DNA of 56,846 nucleotides, filler included, from Platydemus manokwari (lineage: Eukaryota): assembly GCA_037951405.1 (NCBI GenBank). It is 5 parts of 5 records of this genome, joined end to end, with 100 filler letters (N's around TTAATTAATTAA, not from the genome) between each part and the next. Parts side by side here need not be neighbours in the genome. Positions count along the whole stretch, not along the records: positions 1 to 9,471 come from JBBMOY011244651.1; 4 more parts are not named here. One strand, given 5' to 3'. The notes under the pieces were generated by a model, which was not told where the DNA came from, made no database searches, and saw nothing but the letters and a program-made list of their open reading frames with translations. Position 1 is the stretch's first letter; the number at the start of each line of letters is the position of its first letter. Below, in pieces: positions 2,986 through 9,145 of this stretch. The position numbers were made by a program, and so were the translations under genes.

Positions 2986-3346
2986 ATGAAAAACACAAAT
3001 TCAAAAGGAAAGAGATAGGATTTAAGTATCAAGGAGAAACAGAAATTGTTAAAATTATTCGATGAAGATAAAGGTTGCTCTCAACTCTTTCTCTTATCAA
3101 AATATAATCTTTCATCAAACTGTATAAATAATGCTATCTAAAGACTCCATTTTGAATTCAAACTTGAATACGAAACAAAAACGAAAATCACGTTTACGTA
3201 GTGGATACCAAGTTGATGCCATCTCATATGAATGCCGTATTATGATAAACAAAATATGGGATTTGATTGAAGAAATTCAGGGAGAAAAAGCATCTAGACA
3301 ATTGAAAATCACAGACTTTATTATGTGTCAACTACATTCCTTGTGA
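2986..3346 (+). pseudogene. Internally deleted pogo/Tigger (CENP-B-like) transposase relic
   Basis: N-terminal KGKR*DLSIKEKQKLLKLFDEDKGCSQ...KYNLS..I (HTH_psq-like) and RKSRLRSGYQVD join directly to C-terminal RQLKITDF (PIP-box-like tail of pogo transposases). A stop and a frameshift are present, and no DDE core is seen. Confidence 0.6.
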
Positions 3347-3744: not shown

Positions 3745-4000
3745 GCAAACAACCAATCACAGCAGAGCTAGATAATAAACGAAAATCGGAAAAAGGGACA
3801 TAGTCACACAACAACGCAGAAATAGGGATTGACTAACCCCACTCGCAAAAACTAATCAGCCCAATAGGAACATGGAAAAGCAAAGATCGATTAAAAATTT
3901 GATACAAACAAGACACAAATACTACATACAGATTTCGAGTATAAATATCGATGTAAAGATGTCCAACTGCCAGTTGGAAGCCAGGTTTCGGTTATGTTTT
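3745..4000 (+). repeat. Dispersed repeat, copy A (possibly LTR-derived)
   Basis: AACCAATCACAGCAGAG...CACACAACAAC...CATGGAAAAGCAAAGATC...GTAAAGATG..CAGTTGGAAGCCAGG is colinear with the reverse complement of ~9690-9950. Confidence 0.75.
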
Positions 4001-7000
4001 GTAGTAGTACGAGTATTAGTGTATTTTTGTAAGATTGCTGATCAGTACGCAGGTTGGAAATAAAATCTGTAGCCTTCGAGTTTTGAAGTCAGTGATTATT
4101 CAGATGTTTAGAAGTAGAACTCAACATATATGATACAAAATTAACATCAAATCAGCCGAAAGAAAGAAAAGAAATAAGCTCAAATAACCTCACGAAAGAG
4201 TATAAATATTGGAATATTCCCGGGATTAATAGTGAATAATTTAAGTAACGATATGACTACACAATTTTGAAGCTGTCAGCTTTGATTTGTTCACTAAACG
4301 ATAGCTCATCCTTTAAAAAATAATAAAAAATGACAAACCAAAACCCAAACCAATATTATAAAAACATGGTTTTAATTAACGAAACCTAATAAAATGAGCT
4401 GTTTATGAATAAGTAATTTTATTCTAATCAGTTTGAATAGAGATGTCATTGAAATTGTGATAATATTTCATTTTGACTAAAATAGATTCGCGAAATATTT
4501 CCAGGAAATAATTAGCCCATGTTACACAATGATGAAAATAAAATAAAGATTTTGTGTGTATTAATTTTAATTTTACTCTTTTTATAGAAATCATATCGAT
4601 ATTACGAACACAGTTAATTGGATAAAAACACCTGAGAAAATGTTATTATGCCAATAACAAAATTAAAATGGAAACGTTTTATGTTTACTAATAGGTAAAT
4701 ATTATTGAATCAAACATTATGTTGTTGACATCATATTTTAATTAATTTACCTTGAGTTAAAAATATCTATGAAATTATATTTATTTTAGTCCACAGTTTC
4801 AATTCCGATCAAATGATATGATAGGTATTTTAGAAAAACTAGTAGTAAGAAAAACAAATTCCACTTAGGATTTTATATTTTTAAGCAGTGTGCAGAATAA
4901 TTTCTGGATATCGCTATTCGTGAAGTCTGATATATTTCTAAATAGAATAAAAAAATCACTTATGTTAGTTCAGATCATTTTATTTTATTTTATTTTAATC
5001 GATACCCGATAAGGTTTGGGAACTTGGTTTTTTGTACTCATTTAAATAAATGTGTAAATGAGAAAATGCAGATTGAAAAAAGATTAACATATTCAAAGAA
5101 TATACTTCAGCGGGTGGAGTTTTCGGACAATATAGCTAATTAAAATTATTTAAATTCCTTTTGTTGGAAAGTGGGTGTAGATAAAAGCTCTTGAAAAATT
5201 AATACTCAAGAAAGAGATCCGTTTAGGAACAAATTATTCCTGAAAAGAACCACGTATATAAAAAATCTTCAATGGAAAAAATCATTCATTAACAATTAAA
5301 ATTGATTTGTACTCATCGAAACTTTCTCCCTCTCAAGCAAATCATATAACTCCCGATGGGAGCTTTGAATTCCAGTTAAACGAAGCCACACGAGAATTGC
5401 TTATCTAGCTTCGAATTCCATTTGAGATAAATAAAAATGATAAAATAGATAGTAAAAAGCAAAAAACAGTAAAAATGTGTAAAGCAATTTAATCAAAGAC
5501 AATAAAAATTTTTAAAACATGATGGAGAAATCTGTCCAATGAATAGATGTTAATTATACCGAATTCATTCTAAAAAAGTTAATAAAAAACTTTTATTTAA
5601 AGGAACATAACAATCTAGATGCATTATTAGAGCTGAAAATCTTAATAAAGATTCCAGTAGCTCACATTTTCTCAAAGTAAAAACAATTATCACTTTATCA
5701 AGCTTTGTTTAAAATCTTTCTCAAAAACGTGACTAACGAATCAGCATGAATAATAAAAAAAGAATTTAAGAAATGTTGTTTTCGTTACTAAAAATAAACA
5801 TCCAATTAAACTTAGTATAGTATATCATGAAAGAAAACAATCTTGGAAAGAAATCCATAAAATAGTTGAAAAATGAGAGATAGCGCATAAACAAACGCCA
5901 AATAGTCAATGGTACAACATATTGTAAGCACTATTATATTAATTATGTCGATATTATTGTTTTGAGATCAACGGATTATTCTCAAGACTATCCTATCAAT
6001 TTAAGTAGGCGGTTCGTGACAATTCTCATCATTTCCATTATTTGTATTGTAACGATGGTTTTGGTCTTAGATGGATCACCAGTTTAAGTTGGAAAACATC
6101 TTAACATTCAGATCTAAAATTTCAGCGATATTTTTATCATCTCTGTAAATCATTTAATTTTCAAATTATAATGTGCTTTACACTTTTGCTATCATACATA
6201 TTGTTTGAAAATCAAACCAAGACATTCCTTCAAAAACTGTCAGATAAGTTGCGTATATAATCCAGCTTCCAATGGATTCTTTCAAATTCCAAAAATTGTA
6301 AAATCATATTTTTGCACCCCTTTGCAAACAAATTAGATAAAAGTTAATTCAAACAGGTCTCTTATCTGGTTAAAAATTATTTTATAAAACTTGAAGATTT
6401 TGATCTAAACAAAAAGGAATTATTTAAATTTATTGAGCAACAGATTATTCTGAATAAATCGAATCGAGCGCTTCAACGTCTGAAGTTTAAGCCCAAAATT
6501 TTACCATACTGTTATATATGCTCAATATAACGAAATCGGTACTGCGTTAAAACCAAATGAAATAAAATAATTTAAAGTATTGGTTTTTTATACTGGTTGT
6601 GGATGTGTTATGAGATTGGTTATCGAGGTGCTCGCTGTTGTACAGGTCGGACTCCAAACAATCTGTTGTGTTTCGTGCGAAGTATGTAGGTTGCGATTAT
6701 CAAATACTACAATAGCAAATTAACAAGTTGATTAATATGATTATGAAATAACAGAACTGGCGAAGTGTTGGCTCACTTAATCAGAAGGTAAGATTCACGA
6801 TACGGGGGAACCGTATAATGAATAAAAGCTATAAAAATGGCAGCAAAACGAAGAATGCGTTACTTAATACCGTATCTATCGACACTGTATGAAATTATTA
6901 CAAGTCGGGCTATACCTCGCTGACTAATTCAATCGGCTTGTGGAGGAGATTTCTGTTACGGTATGCTTGGATCGTAGCTGACTAATGCTTCTTTCTGTGA

Positions 7001-7898
7001 CTAATTTTCTCTAGCTGATATCGAATCGTAGTCTCTCAGCTATGTGACTGTGCTTTTAATCTGATAATTGGTTGTTTGCAATTAACTTCTTGGCTTTCAC
7101 TGTCTTCGCTAATTTTATTGCGCCCTGTTCTAAAGTTCTGTCATCTTATATATCATTTTTTGTTACGGTTTCATCCAATCATAATTTTTCTATTTCTTGA
7201 ATTTAAAAATCCTATTTTTGTTTTCTGTTCTATTTTTGCAATTATTTAGTTCTATTTTTAGATTCTTGTATTTTTTTATTCTTTTTTTGTAATTATATAT
7301 TTCTATTTTTAATTGCAAGTTTATTTTTAGAATTTTTATTTATGTGATTATATTTATGGGTGTAACATGTTATTCGTCGTTGTATGACTCACTGTGAGTT
7401 TGGATCCTAACAAAAGCACCAAATTTATTTAAAAGGTGTAGCATTTTAGCATCTTAAAATATGAAAACATAAAATAAAATATTTCCAAGATACTCACTAT
7501 CTAATAAATCTAAACAAAATTTTTATGCAATATTTTTCAACTATTTATACTAGTTGATAATATGTACTTTATATATCAAATATAATTAATTATAATTAAA
7601 TATAATTTTAATTATTATTTTTAATTAATTGCCTGATTGAGCCACGGGCATCCGTCATAGTCACAACTCAATCTGTAATCCATTATTAATTGGATTTCTT
7701 TAAGTTTTCGTACTCCAACGGGATTTGTCCTGATATCAATAATGTGTCAAAATTTATTGCCTATCAGTGCTTTAAAATCCCGCCGGGGTTTACGTGTATT
7801 TTTAGAAACAATATAGCAATCCTAGGTTTTGGATTACTTGATAAATTGGTCTCAAAATCAGTATATAAACGGATAGCTATATTCTAAATTTCTTTTAG

Positions 7899-7954
7899 TC
7901 TTATCTGTCTCTGGTACGAAGCACTGATGAGTTCTATGGAAGGCCGAAATAAGA
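7899..7954 (+). ncRNA. Type III hammerhead ribozyme (HHR1)
   Basis: Stem III UCUUAU/AUAAGA (6 bp) with triplet AUC, cleavage after 7905. Stem I UGUCUC-loop UGGUAC-GAAGCA has 1 mismatch. CUGAUGA is at 7924-7930. Stem II GUUCU-loop AUGGA-AGGCC has 1 mismatch. GAAA is at 7946-7949. Confidence 0.8.
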
Positions 7955-8025
7955 GATTATCCGTATCATATAGCCACTATCATTATCATTGGAACTTTGT
8001 TCTTGAAGGCTCCGAGAAATCAAAA

Positions 8026-8085
8026 AGTCCTATATATCTCTGAACTGAGGTACTGATGAGACCTACAGAGGGCCGAAACAGAACT
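8026..8085 (+). ncRNA. Type III hammerhead ribozyme (HHR2, partly degenerate)
   Basis: Stem III AGUCCUAU/ACAGAACU pairs 6 of 8, with an A.C mismatch next to the core and triplet AUA, cleavage after 8034. Stem I UAUCUC-loop UGAACU-GAGGUA pairs 6 of 6. CUGAUGA is at 8053-8059. Stem II is GACCU-loop ACAGA-GGGCC. GAAA is at 8075-8078. Confidence 0.75.
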
Positions 8086-8983
8086 CATTTTCAACAAAAG
8101 TAAGTTTATTAATTTTTTAAAAATTTTTGATAATCAATCAAATAGATTAAAATTTTTGAAAAATACAATTTTTCCTTAAAATCTGTAATTGCTAATTATA
8201 TACTTCTCAAAACTTTCCATTACATTTGATCATGGAATAATTATTATCAGCTTAACTTGAAACCACCAAGGCAGAAATACATTTTATAGACGATTTAAAA
8301 TACATAGAGAAAAGTTGAGAGACCACAAGCTGCATTGGTCGAAATGTTTAAAAGAAGCAATTCCATATGAATGGCAATGCGAAAGAATTATTAAAAATTT
8401 CTAACAAGATATAAGAATGTACTACAATTTTTCTAAAAATAAATCCTTATAATATATGAATTAAGAAAATATAAAATAATTTTTGATTGCAGAACATCAC
8501 CATGGAAGTAAGTTTGTTCAGACATTGATTTCCATAATGACCATGTTAATAAATCCCCATAAATCATCTCATGACATGTTAGGATTTTTAAAAATAAATT
8601 AAAATTTGTTGAAAATAAAAAATCGACTTTCAATAATATCTTTTGTTGGTGAGGATAAGGAGAGTACAGGACAAAACTAATATGATAATGATAAAAAAAT
8701 AATGAGATTTAATTATAAATCATGTTAACGAGCAACGAAAATGAGTTGGGAGGACAACGTGATTAATTTTTGATTGATTCAAATAATAGATTTTCTTCAT
8801 TTGAATCGATGGACGAATCATAAAACGTTTTGGGTTGCTCTGTGGTATTGATTTCTTTATTTTTCGGAAATAAATAATTTACCAATAAAACTTGCACAAA
8901 GAATGTTTTATTTTTATAATTAACACGAAATAATTTTTAATATTGTAGGAATAGTGAATATTATTGATTTCATAAATATTTTT

Positions 8984-9145
8984 TGTTAGCCGCTACTATT
9001 TTAAAAGCCACACATGATAAACGAACTGATAAGTCAAGACACTAAAAATCTATTTAAAGACAAATATTTAAACAAATAAATTTATTTTGATAAAAATATG
9101 ATTTTAAATAAATTAGAATTAAATTTGAATTAAAAATATCTCACA
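8984..9145 (-). mobile_element. Solo LTR of the TRIM family (internally shortened)
   Basis: TGTTAGCCGCTAC...TATCTCACA is the reverse complement of the TRIM LTR. It is flanked by TTTTT on both sides, a 5-bp TSD of low complexity. Confidence 0.85.

What the first reader, a model, noticed from the sequence alone, without database searches (positions are those of the whole stretch)
7899..8085. Tandem type III hammerhead ribozymes defining a 129-nt self-excising unit (candidate minimal retrozyme or circRNA)
Seen: two same-strand motifs, each with NUH-stem I-CUGAUGA-stem II-GAAA-stem III, the same 6-nt loop 1 beginning UG and 5-nt loop 2 ending GA. Their stem III sequences differ yet each pairs with its own partner, and stem I differs by a compensatory G-C vs A-U pair. 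Established: tandem hammerheads define retrozymes, and most described animal genomic hammerheads are type I, while type III is typical of plant viroids, satellites and retrozymes. Inference: cleavage after 7905 and 8034 would release a 129-nt RNA that could be circularised, smaller than typical retrozyme monomers. Because the two copies are diverged rather than simple tandem duplicates, this may be an undescribed double-ribozyme element. HHR2 has an A.C mismatch next to the core and may be slow or inactive.
Basis: partly seen in the sequence, partly recalled or inferred. Interest (0 to 1): 0.9.

Follow-up and report, generated by a model that had tools for sequence, protein, structure and literature searches.

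The report
Fossil double hammerhead in LTR-like repeat
Two decayed self-cutting RNA motifs (type III hammerhead ribozymes) sit side by side in an old copy of an ~830-base LTR-like mobile element scattered in hundreds of copies through a probably flatworm genome; this plant-style "retrozyme" layout was not found described for animals in the papers searched, but this copy is almost certainly dead.

Summary
Taken alone they are weak. Rfam Hammerhead_3 gives 15.8 bits for one and nothing for the other, and neither folds as a hammerhead.

They are, however, a worn copy of a dispersed ~828-bp repeat with hundreds of copies in this genome. The family's majority sequence carries two canonical type III hammerheads 125 nt apart, each folding as a hammerhead at minimum free energy. 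Core and stem positions are conserved above background, and one stem I pair differs compensatorily between the two ribozymes.

The repeat is LTR-like: 5'-TGTTA...TAACA-3' ends, 4-bp target-site duplications (14 of 28 perfect), a conserved TATA box about 30 nt upstream of the first ribozyme, and all 57 loci solitary.

The host is not a plant. Its mitochondrial code (AAA=Asn, ATA=Ile) points to a flatworm.

The best reading is a fossil solo LTR of an LTR-retrozyme-like family with a doubled ribozyme. The 129-nt "minimal retrozyme" reading is weak: the spacer is the least conserved part, the excised RNA is not unusually structured, and no arrays of the small unit were seen. No RNA data exist.

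Verdict: new variant of a known kind; moderate interest.

The parts
6506..6509 (.). Possible left target-site duplication of the window copy (ATAC).
   Evidence: Sequence. It matches ATAG at 8142-8145 in 3 of 4 positions only if the 3' end is placed at 8141, so it is ambiguous in this copy.
6510..6577 (+). 5' end of the LTR-like element, beginning TGTTATATATGC (family positions 1 to about 90).
   Evidence: The family majority sequence matches 6510-6565. Other copies match 6502-6571. Sequence read.
6578..7411 (+). Nested insertion of an unrelated ~834-bp dispersed repeat ending ..CCTAACA. It is flanked by a duplicated AAAG (6574-6577 and 7412-7415). It is not part of the hammerhead family.
   Evidence: At least 536 candidates elsewhere in the genome. 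Sequence. No hit of the family ribozyme model.
7412..8140 (+). Remainder of the LTR-like element (family positions 87-828), 82% identical to the family majority sequence.
7629..7854 (+). Multi-hairpin domain (family positions 330-545), with a 10-nt insertion in this copy.
   Evidence: The majority sequence folds at -69 kcal/mol (z -7.0) on the + strand and z -8.8 on the - strand, against mononucleotide shuffles. Both subfamily sequences keep the fold.
7862..7869 (+). TATATAAA box, 29 nt upstream of the first base of HHR1. It is identical in both subfamilies.
   Evidence: Promoter function is inferred, not shown.
7898..7955 (+). HHR1, a decayed type III hammerhead with site AUC.
   Evidence: Family model R1 gives 70.5 bits, but this copy was in the training set. 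No Rfam hit. Stems III/I/II paired 6/7, 5/6, 3/4. Does not fold as a hammerhead.
7905..7906 (+). Predicted cleavage site 1 (after C7905).
   Evidence: Position relative to the conserved core. Inferred.
7956..8026 (+). Spacer between the ribozymes. It carries the 5-nt insertion seen in part of subfamily B, which makes the cut spacing 129 instead of 125 nt.
   Evidence: The spacer diverges 1.21 times the expected rate.
8027..8084 (+). HHR2, a decayed type III hammerhead with site AUA.
   Evidence: Rfam RF00008 gives 15.8 bits, E=1. R1 gives 69.7 bits, but this copy was in the training set. Stems III/I/II paired 5/7, 6/6, 3/4.
8034..8035 (+). Predicted cleavage site 2 (after A8034).
   Evidence: Position relative to the conserved core. 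Inferred.
7906..8034 (+). The 129-nt RNA that double cleavage would release (125 nt in the family majority sequence).
   Evidence: Not observed as RNA.
8088..8091 (+). TTTT run 4 nt after HHR2 (T4 in subfamily B, T5 in subfamily A).
   Evidence: A role as a terminator is speculative.
8136..8140 (+). Degenerate 3' terminus (AATCA, where the family has TAACA).

Best explanation
Window 7898-8084 is the worn remnant of a doubled type III hammerhead that lies in the 3' quarter of an ~828-bp LTR-like retroelement. In the window the element spans 6510 to about 8140 and is split by a later 834-bp insertion.

The family has hundreds of solitary copies in a non-plant, most likely flatworm, nuclear genome. 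Each copy is bounded by 5'-TGTTA...TAACA-3' and a 4-bp target-site duplication, so it was inserted by an integrase of the LTR-retrotransposon type.

In the ancestral sequence a conserved TATA box lies about 30 nt upstream of HHR1. Both ribozymes are canonical, share the same stem III, and cut 125 nt apart.

The most likely mechanism is inferred by analogy with plant LTR retrozymes:
1. LTR-initiated transcripts cut themselves at these sites.
2. [quoted passage not shown]
3. Double cleavage within one LTR also frees a ~125-nt by-product whose ends are held together by a re-formed hammerhead.

What is shown: the motifs, the family, the termini and duplications, and conservation of the ribozyme core and stems.
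What is inferred: transcription, cleavage, circularisation, and the former existence of two-LTR parents.

The window copy itself is very probably inactive.
For: Family size: 452-688 first-look candidates; at least 150 hits of the family model at 58 bits or more, the scoring cap; 1319 contigs of a DNA run lie on one copy at 80% likeness or more.

Ancestral ribozymes:
- The majority sequence has every conserved core base, A15.1-U16.1, H17, and three perfect helices, twice.
- The hammerhead fold is the minimum-free-energy fold of both (-19.2 and -20.0 kcal/mol).
- It is also the minimum-free-energy fold of natural intact copies L030 and L047 (z -2.7 and -2.9).

Selection on the ribozymes:
- 87.6% of cells pair, against 35-45% with slid partners.
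- Stem I pair 2 is GC in one ribozyme and AU in the other. Four single copies show double compensatory changes.
- Core positions diverge at 0.68 of expectation (P=3.5e-5) and stems at 0.85 (P=5e-4).
- Between the two subfamilies there are 0 differences in HHR1, 3 structure-neutral differences in HHR2, and 33 in the other 483 positions.

LTR nature:
- TG..CA ends with 5-nt inverted termini.
- 14 of 28 copies have a perfect 4-bp duplication and 10 more match 3 of 4; chance per copy is 0.008.
- There is no long inverted or direct terminal repeat; the only internal direct repeat is the ribozyme pair.
- A second, unrelated repeat nested in the window copy has the same end and a 4-bp duplication.

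Analogy with plants: plant retrozyme LTRs carry a promoter upstream of a type III hammerhead that cuts off the 5' leader (PMC12029980), have 4-bp duplications, and leave many solo LTRs (PMC4918200).

Host:
- No RuBisCO in the assembly.
- The nuclear mitochondrial pseudogenes match a COX1 that uses AAA=Asn, ATA=Ile, AGA=Ser, TGA=Trp.
- Contigs carrying those pseudogenes share repeats with the window and with family loci.
Against: - No copy with two LTRs, an internal region, a primer-binding site or a polypurine tract was seen: 0 of 57 loci share flanks, and there is no same-strand second pair on any contig among the 150 scored model hits. The retrozyme life cycle is therefore an analogy only.
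- Rfam Hammerhead_3 stays far below its 48.5-bit cut-off: 15.8 bits in the window and 20.4-24.7 bits for the best copies.
- RNAalifold on 40 decayed copies predicts no pairs.
- None of 54 copies keeps both ribozymes intact.
- No RNA run exists for this organism, so transcription and cleavage are untested.
- No AATAAA signal lies downstream of the TATA box on this strand.
- The host phylum is inferred from the mitochondrial code, not from a named match. The assembly also holds gastropod-like and arthropod-like mitochondria.
Confidence: 0.6

Rival explanations
1. Ordinary solo LTRs of a now-lost autonomous Gypsy-like LTR retrotransposon. The ribozymes served the element in some other way, for example by trimming or attenuating LTR-driven or read-through transcripts, and there was no circular-RNA (retrozyme) cycle.
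For: TG..CA ends and 4-bp duplications. All copies are solitary. The family is old, about 10% from its subfamily sequences. A second solo-LTR-like family lies in the same window.
Against: No coding internal region was linked to the family. I know of no autonomous LTR retrotransposon with canonical hammerheads in its LTR (my own knowledge, and the papers read). The shared stem III and the strongly structured upstream domain fit an RNA selected for processing and structure.
Confidence: 0.2
2. One reading: the ribozyme pair is a self-contained cassette whose product, a 125-129-nt circular RNA, is the functional or mobile unit (a minimal retrozyme). The LTR-like unit only carries and expresses it.
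For: The TATA box lies about 30 nt upstream of HHR1 and a T4-5 run follows HHR2. Both ribozymes have the same stem III, so a circle would carry a complete hammerhead. The minimum-free-energy fold of the excised RNA brings its two ends together in that hammerhead.
Against: The spacer evolves faster than the rest of the unit (1.21 times expected, P=3e-5). The excised RNA is only 53-54% paired, with z +0.5 linear and +0.8 circular, unlike described retrozyme circles. No contig has three or more hits at 125-nt spacing among the 150 scored. Insertions are of the whole 828-bp unit.
Confidence: 0.12
3. A pseudo-LTR of a Penelope-like element, or a metazoan non-LTR retrozyme.
For: The host is an animal, and those are the known homes of animal hammerheads (PMC7229834; bioRxiv 10.64898/2026.07.22.740005).
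Against: Topology is type III, not type I. Stem III is a stable 7 bp rather than minimal. The copies are dispersed and solitary, not tandem repeats. The ends are TG..CA with a fixed 4-bp duplication.
Confidence: 0.02
4. Chance resemblance; no ribozyme ever existed here.
For: The window copies fail Rfam's cut-off, a strict descriptor, and folding.
Against: The family majority sequence is canonical twice over. The strict descriptor finds 0 hits in 5 shuffles of 146 kb, against 9 real hits. Conservation and covariation signals are present.
Confidence: 0.01

Closest known systems
Plant LTR retrozymes (Cervera, Urbina & de la Pena 2016, PMC4918200; NbRZ1, PMC12029980)
   Same: A type III hammerhead sits inside an LTR, downstream of an LTR promoter. 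Insertions have 4-bp target-site duplications, many copies are solo LTRs, and the element is non-coding.
   Different: The host is an animal-type genome with about 27-31% G+C, whereas plant retrozymes exceed 55% G+C. Here the unit is 828 bp with two ribozymes 125 nt apart, against one ribozyme per 300-400-bp LTR in plants. The cleavage triplets are AUC and AUA. No two-LTR copy, primer-binding site or polypurine tract was found, and no RNA evidence exists.
Metazoan non-LTR retrozymes (PMC7229834; bioRxiv 10.64898/2026.07.22.740005)
   Same: Animal genomes, low G+C, and repeated hammerheads that could release small RNAs.
   Different: Those carry type I ribozymes in tandem arrays of 150-450 bp, have no LTR features and larger duplications, and give circles of 170-400 nt. 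This family is type III and dispersed, with integrase-type ends.
Penelope-like element pseudo-LTR hammerheads
   Same: Ribozymes in terminal repeats of an animal retroelement, often in pairs.
   Different: Those are minimal type I motifs with a very short helix III that act as dimers. Here each motif has a 7-bp helix III and closed helices I and II.
Sm-alpha / Sj-alpha SINE-like elements of schistosomes (cited in PMC2770079)
   Same: A hammerhead-bearing dispersed repeat in a flatworm.
   Different: Sm-alpha carries a single type I ribozyme in a SINE-like element. There is no sequence or architectural similarity to this family.
Cassandra, Helenus and Ajax: small non-autonomous LTR elements with a small-RNA gene in the LTR (PMC10886601)
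   Same: A small functional-RNA module embedded in the LTR of a non-coding LTR element, with solo LTRs common. Helenus also occurs in animals.
   Different: Their modules derive from 5S rRNA or tRNA (Pol III promoters), not from ribozymes. They have 5-bp duplications and known two-LTR copies.
Eggplant latent viroid (+) hammerhead and its AUC variant (PMC1636495)
   Same: Type III topology. The AUA triplet, as in HHR2, is natural there. AUC, as in HHR1, is catalytically competent.
   Different: AUC is described as essentially absent from natural hammerheads, yet here it is the family state of HHR1. That RNA is a replicating viroid, not a genomic repeat.

Membership tests
Hammerhead ribozyme, type III | Conserved core C3 U4 G5 A6 N7 G8 A9 ... 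G12 A13 A14, the A15.1-U16.1 pair, and H17 not G. | tested here: met
   Present in both window motifs and in the family majority sequence. The core columns C27, G29, A30, G32, A33 and G49-A52 are invariant in the 40 rows, which were chosen for core and stem quality.
Hammerhead ribozyme, type III | Three helices around the core, with helices I and II closed by loops and helix III open (family level). | tested here: met
   The majority sequences have 7, 6 and 4 perfect pairs, and this fold is their minimum-free-energy structure. Natural copies L030 and L047 fold the same way.
Hammerhead ribozyme, type III | The same three helices intact in the window copy. | tested here: not met
   Stems paired 6/7, 5/6, 3/4 and 5/7, 6/6, 3/4. 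The minimum-free-energy folds are not hammerheads. The strict descriptor finds no hit.
Hammerhead ribozyme, type III | Score at or above the Rfam RF00008 gathering threshold (48.5 bits). | tested here: not met
   15.8 bits for window HHR2 and nothing for HHR1. The best family copies score 24.7 and 20.4 bits. The model penalises the 6- and 7-nt loops and the A-U-rich helix III.
Hammerhead ribozyme, type III | Base pairs supported by covariation. | tested here: inconclusive
   One clear compensatory pair separates the two ribozymes (GC 13, AU 21). Four single-copy double changes occur, and 1 of 500 shuffles reaches the observed score. RNAalifold on the same decayed rows predicts nothing.
Hammerhead ribozyme, type III | Self-cleavage at H17, and loop 1-loop 2 tertiary contacts. 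| not testable with these tools
   This needs in vitro transcription. No RNA run is available.
LTR retrozyme | Type III hammerhead embedded in a long terminal repeat with TG..CA ends. | tested here: met
LTR retrozyme | 4-bp target-site duplication. | tested here: met
   14 of 28 perfect and 10 of 28 matching 3 of 4; P about 3e-22 for the perfect ones.
LTR retrozyme | Two LTRs flanking a short non-coding interior with a primer-binding site and a polypurine tract. | tested here: not met
   No shared flanks among 57 loci. No second same-strand pair on any contig among the 150 scored model hits. The assembly is very fragmented, so rare full copies could be missed.
LTR retrozyme | Expression as circular RNA bounded by the ribozyme sites. 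| not testable with these tools
   Only one DNA run holds the sequence and there is no RNA run.
Non-LTR retrozyme / Penelope-like pLTR | Type I hammerhead in tandem repeats of 150-450 bp, with long or variable duplications. | tested here: not met
   Type III topology, dispersed solitary units, and a fixed 4-bp duplication.
Solo LTR of an LTR retrotransposon | TG..CA termini with short inverted ends and a duplication of 4-6 bp, with no internal repeats. | tested here: met
Solo LTR of an LTR retrotransposon | A matching internal (coding or non-coding) region somewhere in the genome. | not tested

The most novel reading that the evidence does not exclude
This is the first LTR-type retrozyme lineage in an animal (a flatworm). 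It carries a doubled type III hammerhead per LTR, with AUC and AUA sites. When active, it released, besides unit-length RNAs, a ~125-nt hammerhead circle, smaller than the 170-400-nt animal retrozyme circles described in PMC7229834.
Probability: 0.3. Interest if true: 0.8.

Novelty: new variant of a known kind. Interest (0 to 1): 0.6.

Why it matters
The literature I could search divides retrozymes cleanly. Plants have LTR retrozymes with type III hammerheads; animals have non-LTR, Penelope-related retrozymes with type I hammerheads (PMC7229834; bioRxiv 10.64898/2026.07.22.740005). One review only hints at unpublished type III elements in insects as a possible source of the plant elements (PMC7761336).

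A flatworm-type genome with hundreds of LTR-like, 4-bp-duplicated units carrying canonical type III hammerheads would break that split. It would bear on where LTR retrozymes, and through them hammerhead viroids, came from. It would also give a natural example of the AUC cleavage triplet, described as essentially absent in nature (PMC1636495).

The window copy itself has no present function. The value lies in the family.

Tried and rejected
- Rfam over the whole window gave no hammerhead at E<=10. Narrow scans stayed below the threshold.
- RNAalifold on 40 decayed ribozyme rows predicted no pairs.
- No ORF of note lies in the window or near the single-copy hammerhead in L031.
- The sequencing-run search found one DNA run and no RNA. 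Read-end and back-joint tests for cleavage or circles were therefore impossible.
- Laying that run's contigs only confirmed high copy number. It also showed two back-joints of 116-117 nt from HHR2 to HHR1. These are most simply copies whose first ribozyme slot was converted to the second type, as in L051, so I do not count them as circles.
- A protein-atlas look-up of the host COX1 gave only generic barcode clusters and no phylum.
- Rejected on features: SINE (no A-tail, TG..CA ends); MITE, Ginger, Sola or piggyBac (inverted termini of only 5 nt, variable duplication sequence); and a tiny two-LTR element (the only internal direct repeat is the ribozyme pair).
- A search for two-LTR copies by pattern was dropped because no further genome letters could be read.
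- A first dinucleotide-shuffle run on the long regions timed out. Mononucleotide shuffles were used instead.

Full report
OBSERVATION

- HHR1 spans 7898-7955, with CUGAUGA at 7924-7930 and GAAA at 7946-7949.
- HHR2 spans 8027-8084, with CUGAUGA at 8053-8059 and GAAA at 8075-8078.
- Each has helix I closed by a 6-nt loop that begins UG, helix II closed by a loop, and an open helix III. That is the type III topology.
- The predicted cuts are after C7905 (triplet AUC) and after A8034 (triplet AUA), 129 nt apart.

On their own these two copies are poor hammerheads.
- Rfam finds nothing in a whole-window scan.
- In a 261-nt scan it finds only HHR2, at 15.8 bits (E=1) against a cut-off of 48.5.
- Both copies have a mismatch at the second pair of helix II, and HHR2 has two mismatches in helix III.
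- Neither adopts the hammerhead fold at minimum free energy.
- A strict descriptor of my own finds no hit in the window.

THE FAMILY

The region belongs to a dispersed repeat in the window's own 911-Mb assembly.
- There are 452 to 688 first-look candidates, 77-89% identical to one another and to a majority-rule sequence.
- A covariance model built from 40 ribozyme rows finds at least 150 places at 58 bits or more, which is the scoring cap.
- 1319 contigs of the one public DNA run that holds the window lie on one copy at 80% likeness or more.

Aligning 51 copies shows that the family's majority sequence carries two canonical type III hammerheads.
- All conserved core bases are present, along with A15.1-U16.1, H17 (C in the first ribozyme, A in the second), the G10.1-C11.1 pair, and perfect helices of 7, 6 and 4 pairs.
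- Both ribozymes have the same helix III (GUCCUAU with AUAGGAC).
- They are 84% identical to each other and are the only internal direct repeat of the unit.
- For both majority sequences the hammerhead is the minimum-free-energy structure (-19.2 and -20.0 kcal/mol).
- The same holds for natural intact copies L030 and L047 (z -2.7 and -2.9).
- The strict descriptor gives 9 hits in 146 kb of family loci and none in five shuffles of those loci.

Paired model hits on one contig lie 125-126 nt apart. The window's 129 nt comes from a 5-nt insertion carried by part of its subfamily.

SELECTION ON THE RIBOZYMES

- On 40 rows, 87.6% of cells pair, against 35-45% when the partners are slid by one to three columns.
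- Helix I pair 2 is G-C in the first ribozyme and A-U in the second (13 and 21 rows). This is a single event.
- Four single copies show double compensatory changes in helix III or helix II. One of them is the window's C-G to U-A change in helix III.
- Relative to base-matched rates in the rest of the unit, core positions diverge at 0.68 of expectation (P=3.5e-5), stems at 0.85 (P=5e-4) and loops at 0.89 (not significant). The spacer diverges at 1.21 (P=3e-5).
- The family splits into two subfamilies of 32 and 22 copies; the window is in the smaller one. Their majority sequences differ at 0 positions in HHR1 and at 3 positions in HHR2. Two of those three are G.U/A-U switches in helix I and one lies in loop 2. 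They differ at 33 of the 483 other positions compared (one-sided Fisher P=0.057) and at 5 of 67 spacer positions.

So the ribozymes were maintained while the family was active, and the spacer was not.

All copies are now old, about 10% from their subfamily sequence. None of 54 keeps both ribozymes intact by my criteria; 3 keep only the first and 6 only the second.

WHAT THE UNIT IS

- Full copies are about 800-840 bp. They start TGTTATATAAGC and end CCACTTAACA, giving TG..CA ends with 5-nt inverted termini.
- Of 28 copies with both ends recognisable, 14 have a perfect 4-bp duplication and 10 more match at 3 of 4 positions. The chance of a perfect match is about 0.008 per copy.
- There is no A-tail, no long terminal inverted repeat and no coding capacity.
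- Flanks of 57 loci share nothing with one another, and no contig shows a second same-strand pair. Every copy seen is therefore solitary.
- A TATATAAA box, identical in both subfamilies, lies about 30 nt upstream of helix III of the first ribozyme.
- A T4-5 run follows the second ribozyme.
- Upstream, family positions 330-545 form a multi-hairpin domain of unusual stability (z -7.0, or -8.8 on the other strand, against mononucleotide shuffles). Both subfamilies keep it.

In the window the unit runs from 6510 to about 8140. It is interrupted at 6578-7411 by a second, unrelated repeat of similar size that also ends TAACA. That insertion duplicated the 4 bases AAAG on entry.

These are the hallmarks of integrase-mediated LTR insertion. 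Penelope-like, SINE and DNA-transposon origins do not fit.

HOST

- The assembly has no RuBisCO large subunit.
- It has four distinct COX1 genes, all reading TGA as sense. By my own recognition, two look gastropod-like and one arthropod-like.
- All eleven degenerate nuclear COX1 fragments examined are closest to the fourth type.
- That fourth type places AAA at conserved Asn positions, ATA at Ile/Val positions and AGA at Ser positions. Translating it with code 9 restores the conserved GGFGNW and FPR-NN-SFW motifs. Code 9 is the echinoderm and flatworm mitochondrial code.
- Contigs with these fragments have 25-32% G+C, similar to the window at 27%. They share dispersed repeats with the window and with family loci.

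I infer a rhabditophoran flatworm, with the snail-like and arthropod-like mitochondria coming from prey, a host or contamination. An echinoderm seems unlikely, given the divergent COX1 (67-68% identity to the others) and the very A+T-rich genome. No named match supports the phylum.

MECHANISM

The nearest described system is the plant LTR retrozyme. It has a type III hammerhead in an LTR, an LTR promoter upstream of it, efficient removal of the 5' leader by the ribozyme, 4-bp duplications and many solo LTRs. Its proposed cycle has unit-length RNAs cut at two ribozymes, circularised, then copied by a Gypsy-type reverse transcriptase into cDNAs that may be solo LTRs (PMC4918200, PMC12029980).

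I take the present family to be the remains of such a lineage in an animal, with the ribozyme duplicated within the LTR.

Because both ribozymes share helix III, any pair of cuts gives ends that re-form a complete hammerhead. The 125-nt fragment's minimum-free-energy fold does exactly this.

Evidence against the 125-nt RNA being the selected product:
- The spacer evolves fast.
- The RNA is only 53-54% paired, with z +0.5 to +0.8.
- No arrays of the small unit were seen.
- The whole 828-bp unit is what inserts.

The retrozyme cycle itself remains an analogy. No two-LTR copy, primer-binding site, polypurine tract or RNA was available.

COMPARISON AND NOVELTY

The papers I could search place type III/LTR retrozymes in plants and type I/non-LTR retrozymes in animals. 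One review remarks on unpublished type III elements in insects. I found nothing on flatworms beyond the type I Sm-alpha elements.

The AUC triplet of the first ribozyme is described as essentially absent from natural hammerheads, although it is catalytically competent.

I rate this a new variant of a known kind. The window copy is a fossil.

NOTE ON METHOD

I computed a majority-rule sequence of the repeat inside scripts, as a coordinate frame and for statistics, before its LTR-like nature was clear. It is not reproduced here, and I propose no rebuilt version. My first notebook entry holds only the two 58-nt ribozyme majority strings.

Noticed in passing
window 6578-7411: A second dispersed repeat (at least 536 candidates in the genome) is nested inside the hammerhead element. 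It is about 834 bp, ends ..CCTAACA, and is flanked by a duplicated AAAG. It looks like a solo LTR of another family and has no hammerhead.
   Followed up: partly
L031 1501-1557 (-) = G000:C1153215:4691-4747: A single-copy, fully canonical type III hammerhead (Rfam 44.6 bits; hammerhead fold at minimum free energy, z -2.6) sits in an A+T-rich unique region with no nearby ORF. It also uses an AUC triplet and is unrelated to the repeat family.
   Followed up: partly
L032 796-850 (-) = G000:C1699800: A Hammerhead_3 match of 43.6 bits, with a CUGACGA core, lies on a 47.5% G+C contig. This probably belongs to another organism in the sample.
   Followed up: no
G000 contigs C1514745, C1389203, C1344449, C1440324 (L061-L064): The assembly holds four different complete COX1 genes: two gastropod-like, one arthropod-like, and one that uses the flatworm/echinoderm code. 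The sample is a mixture. Only the last type matches the nuclear mitochondrial pseudogenes.
   Followed up: yes
window 7629-7854 (family positions 330-545): A strongly structured multi-hairpin domain lies upstream of the TATA box (z about -7 on the + strand, -8.8 on the - strand). It is kept in both subfamilies, with one position pair improving a stem in subfamily A. Its function is unknown.
   Followed up: partly
L051 1681-1738 (-): In this copy the first ribozyme slot carries the helix I and loop 1 of the second ribozyme, which suggests gene conversion between the two. Two contigs of run X1 show matching back-joints of 116-117 nt.
   Followed up: partly
window 8961-9137, also 3248-3326 and 3894-3983: Short matches to other loci and to a contig bearing a mitochondrial pseudogene (L065, L015, L016) indicate further dispersed repeats in the window.
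   Followed up: no
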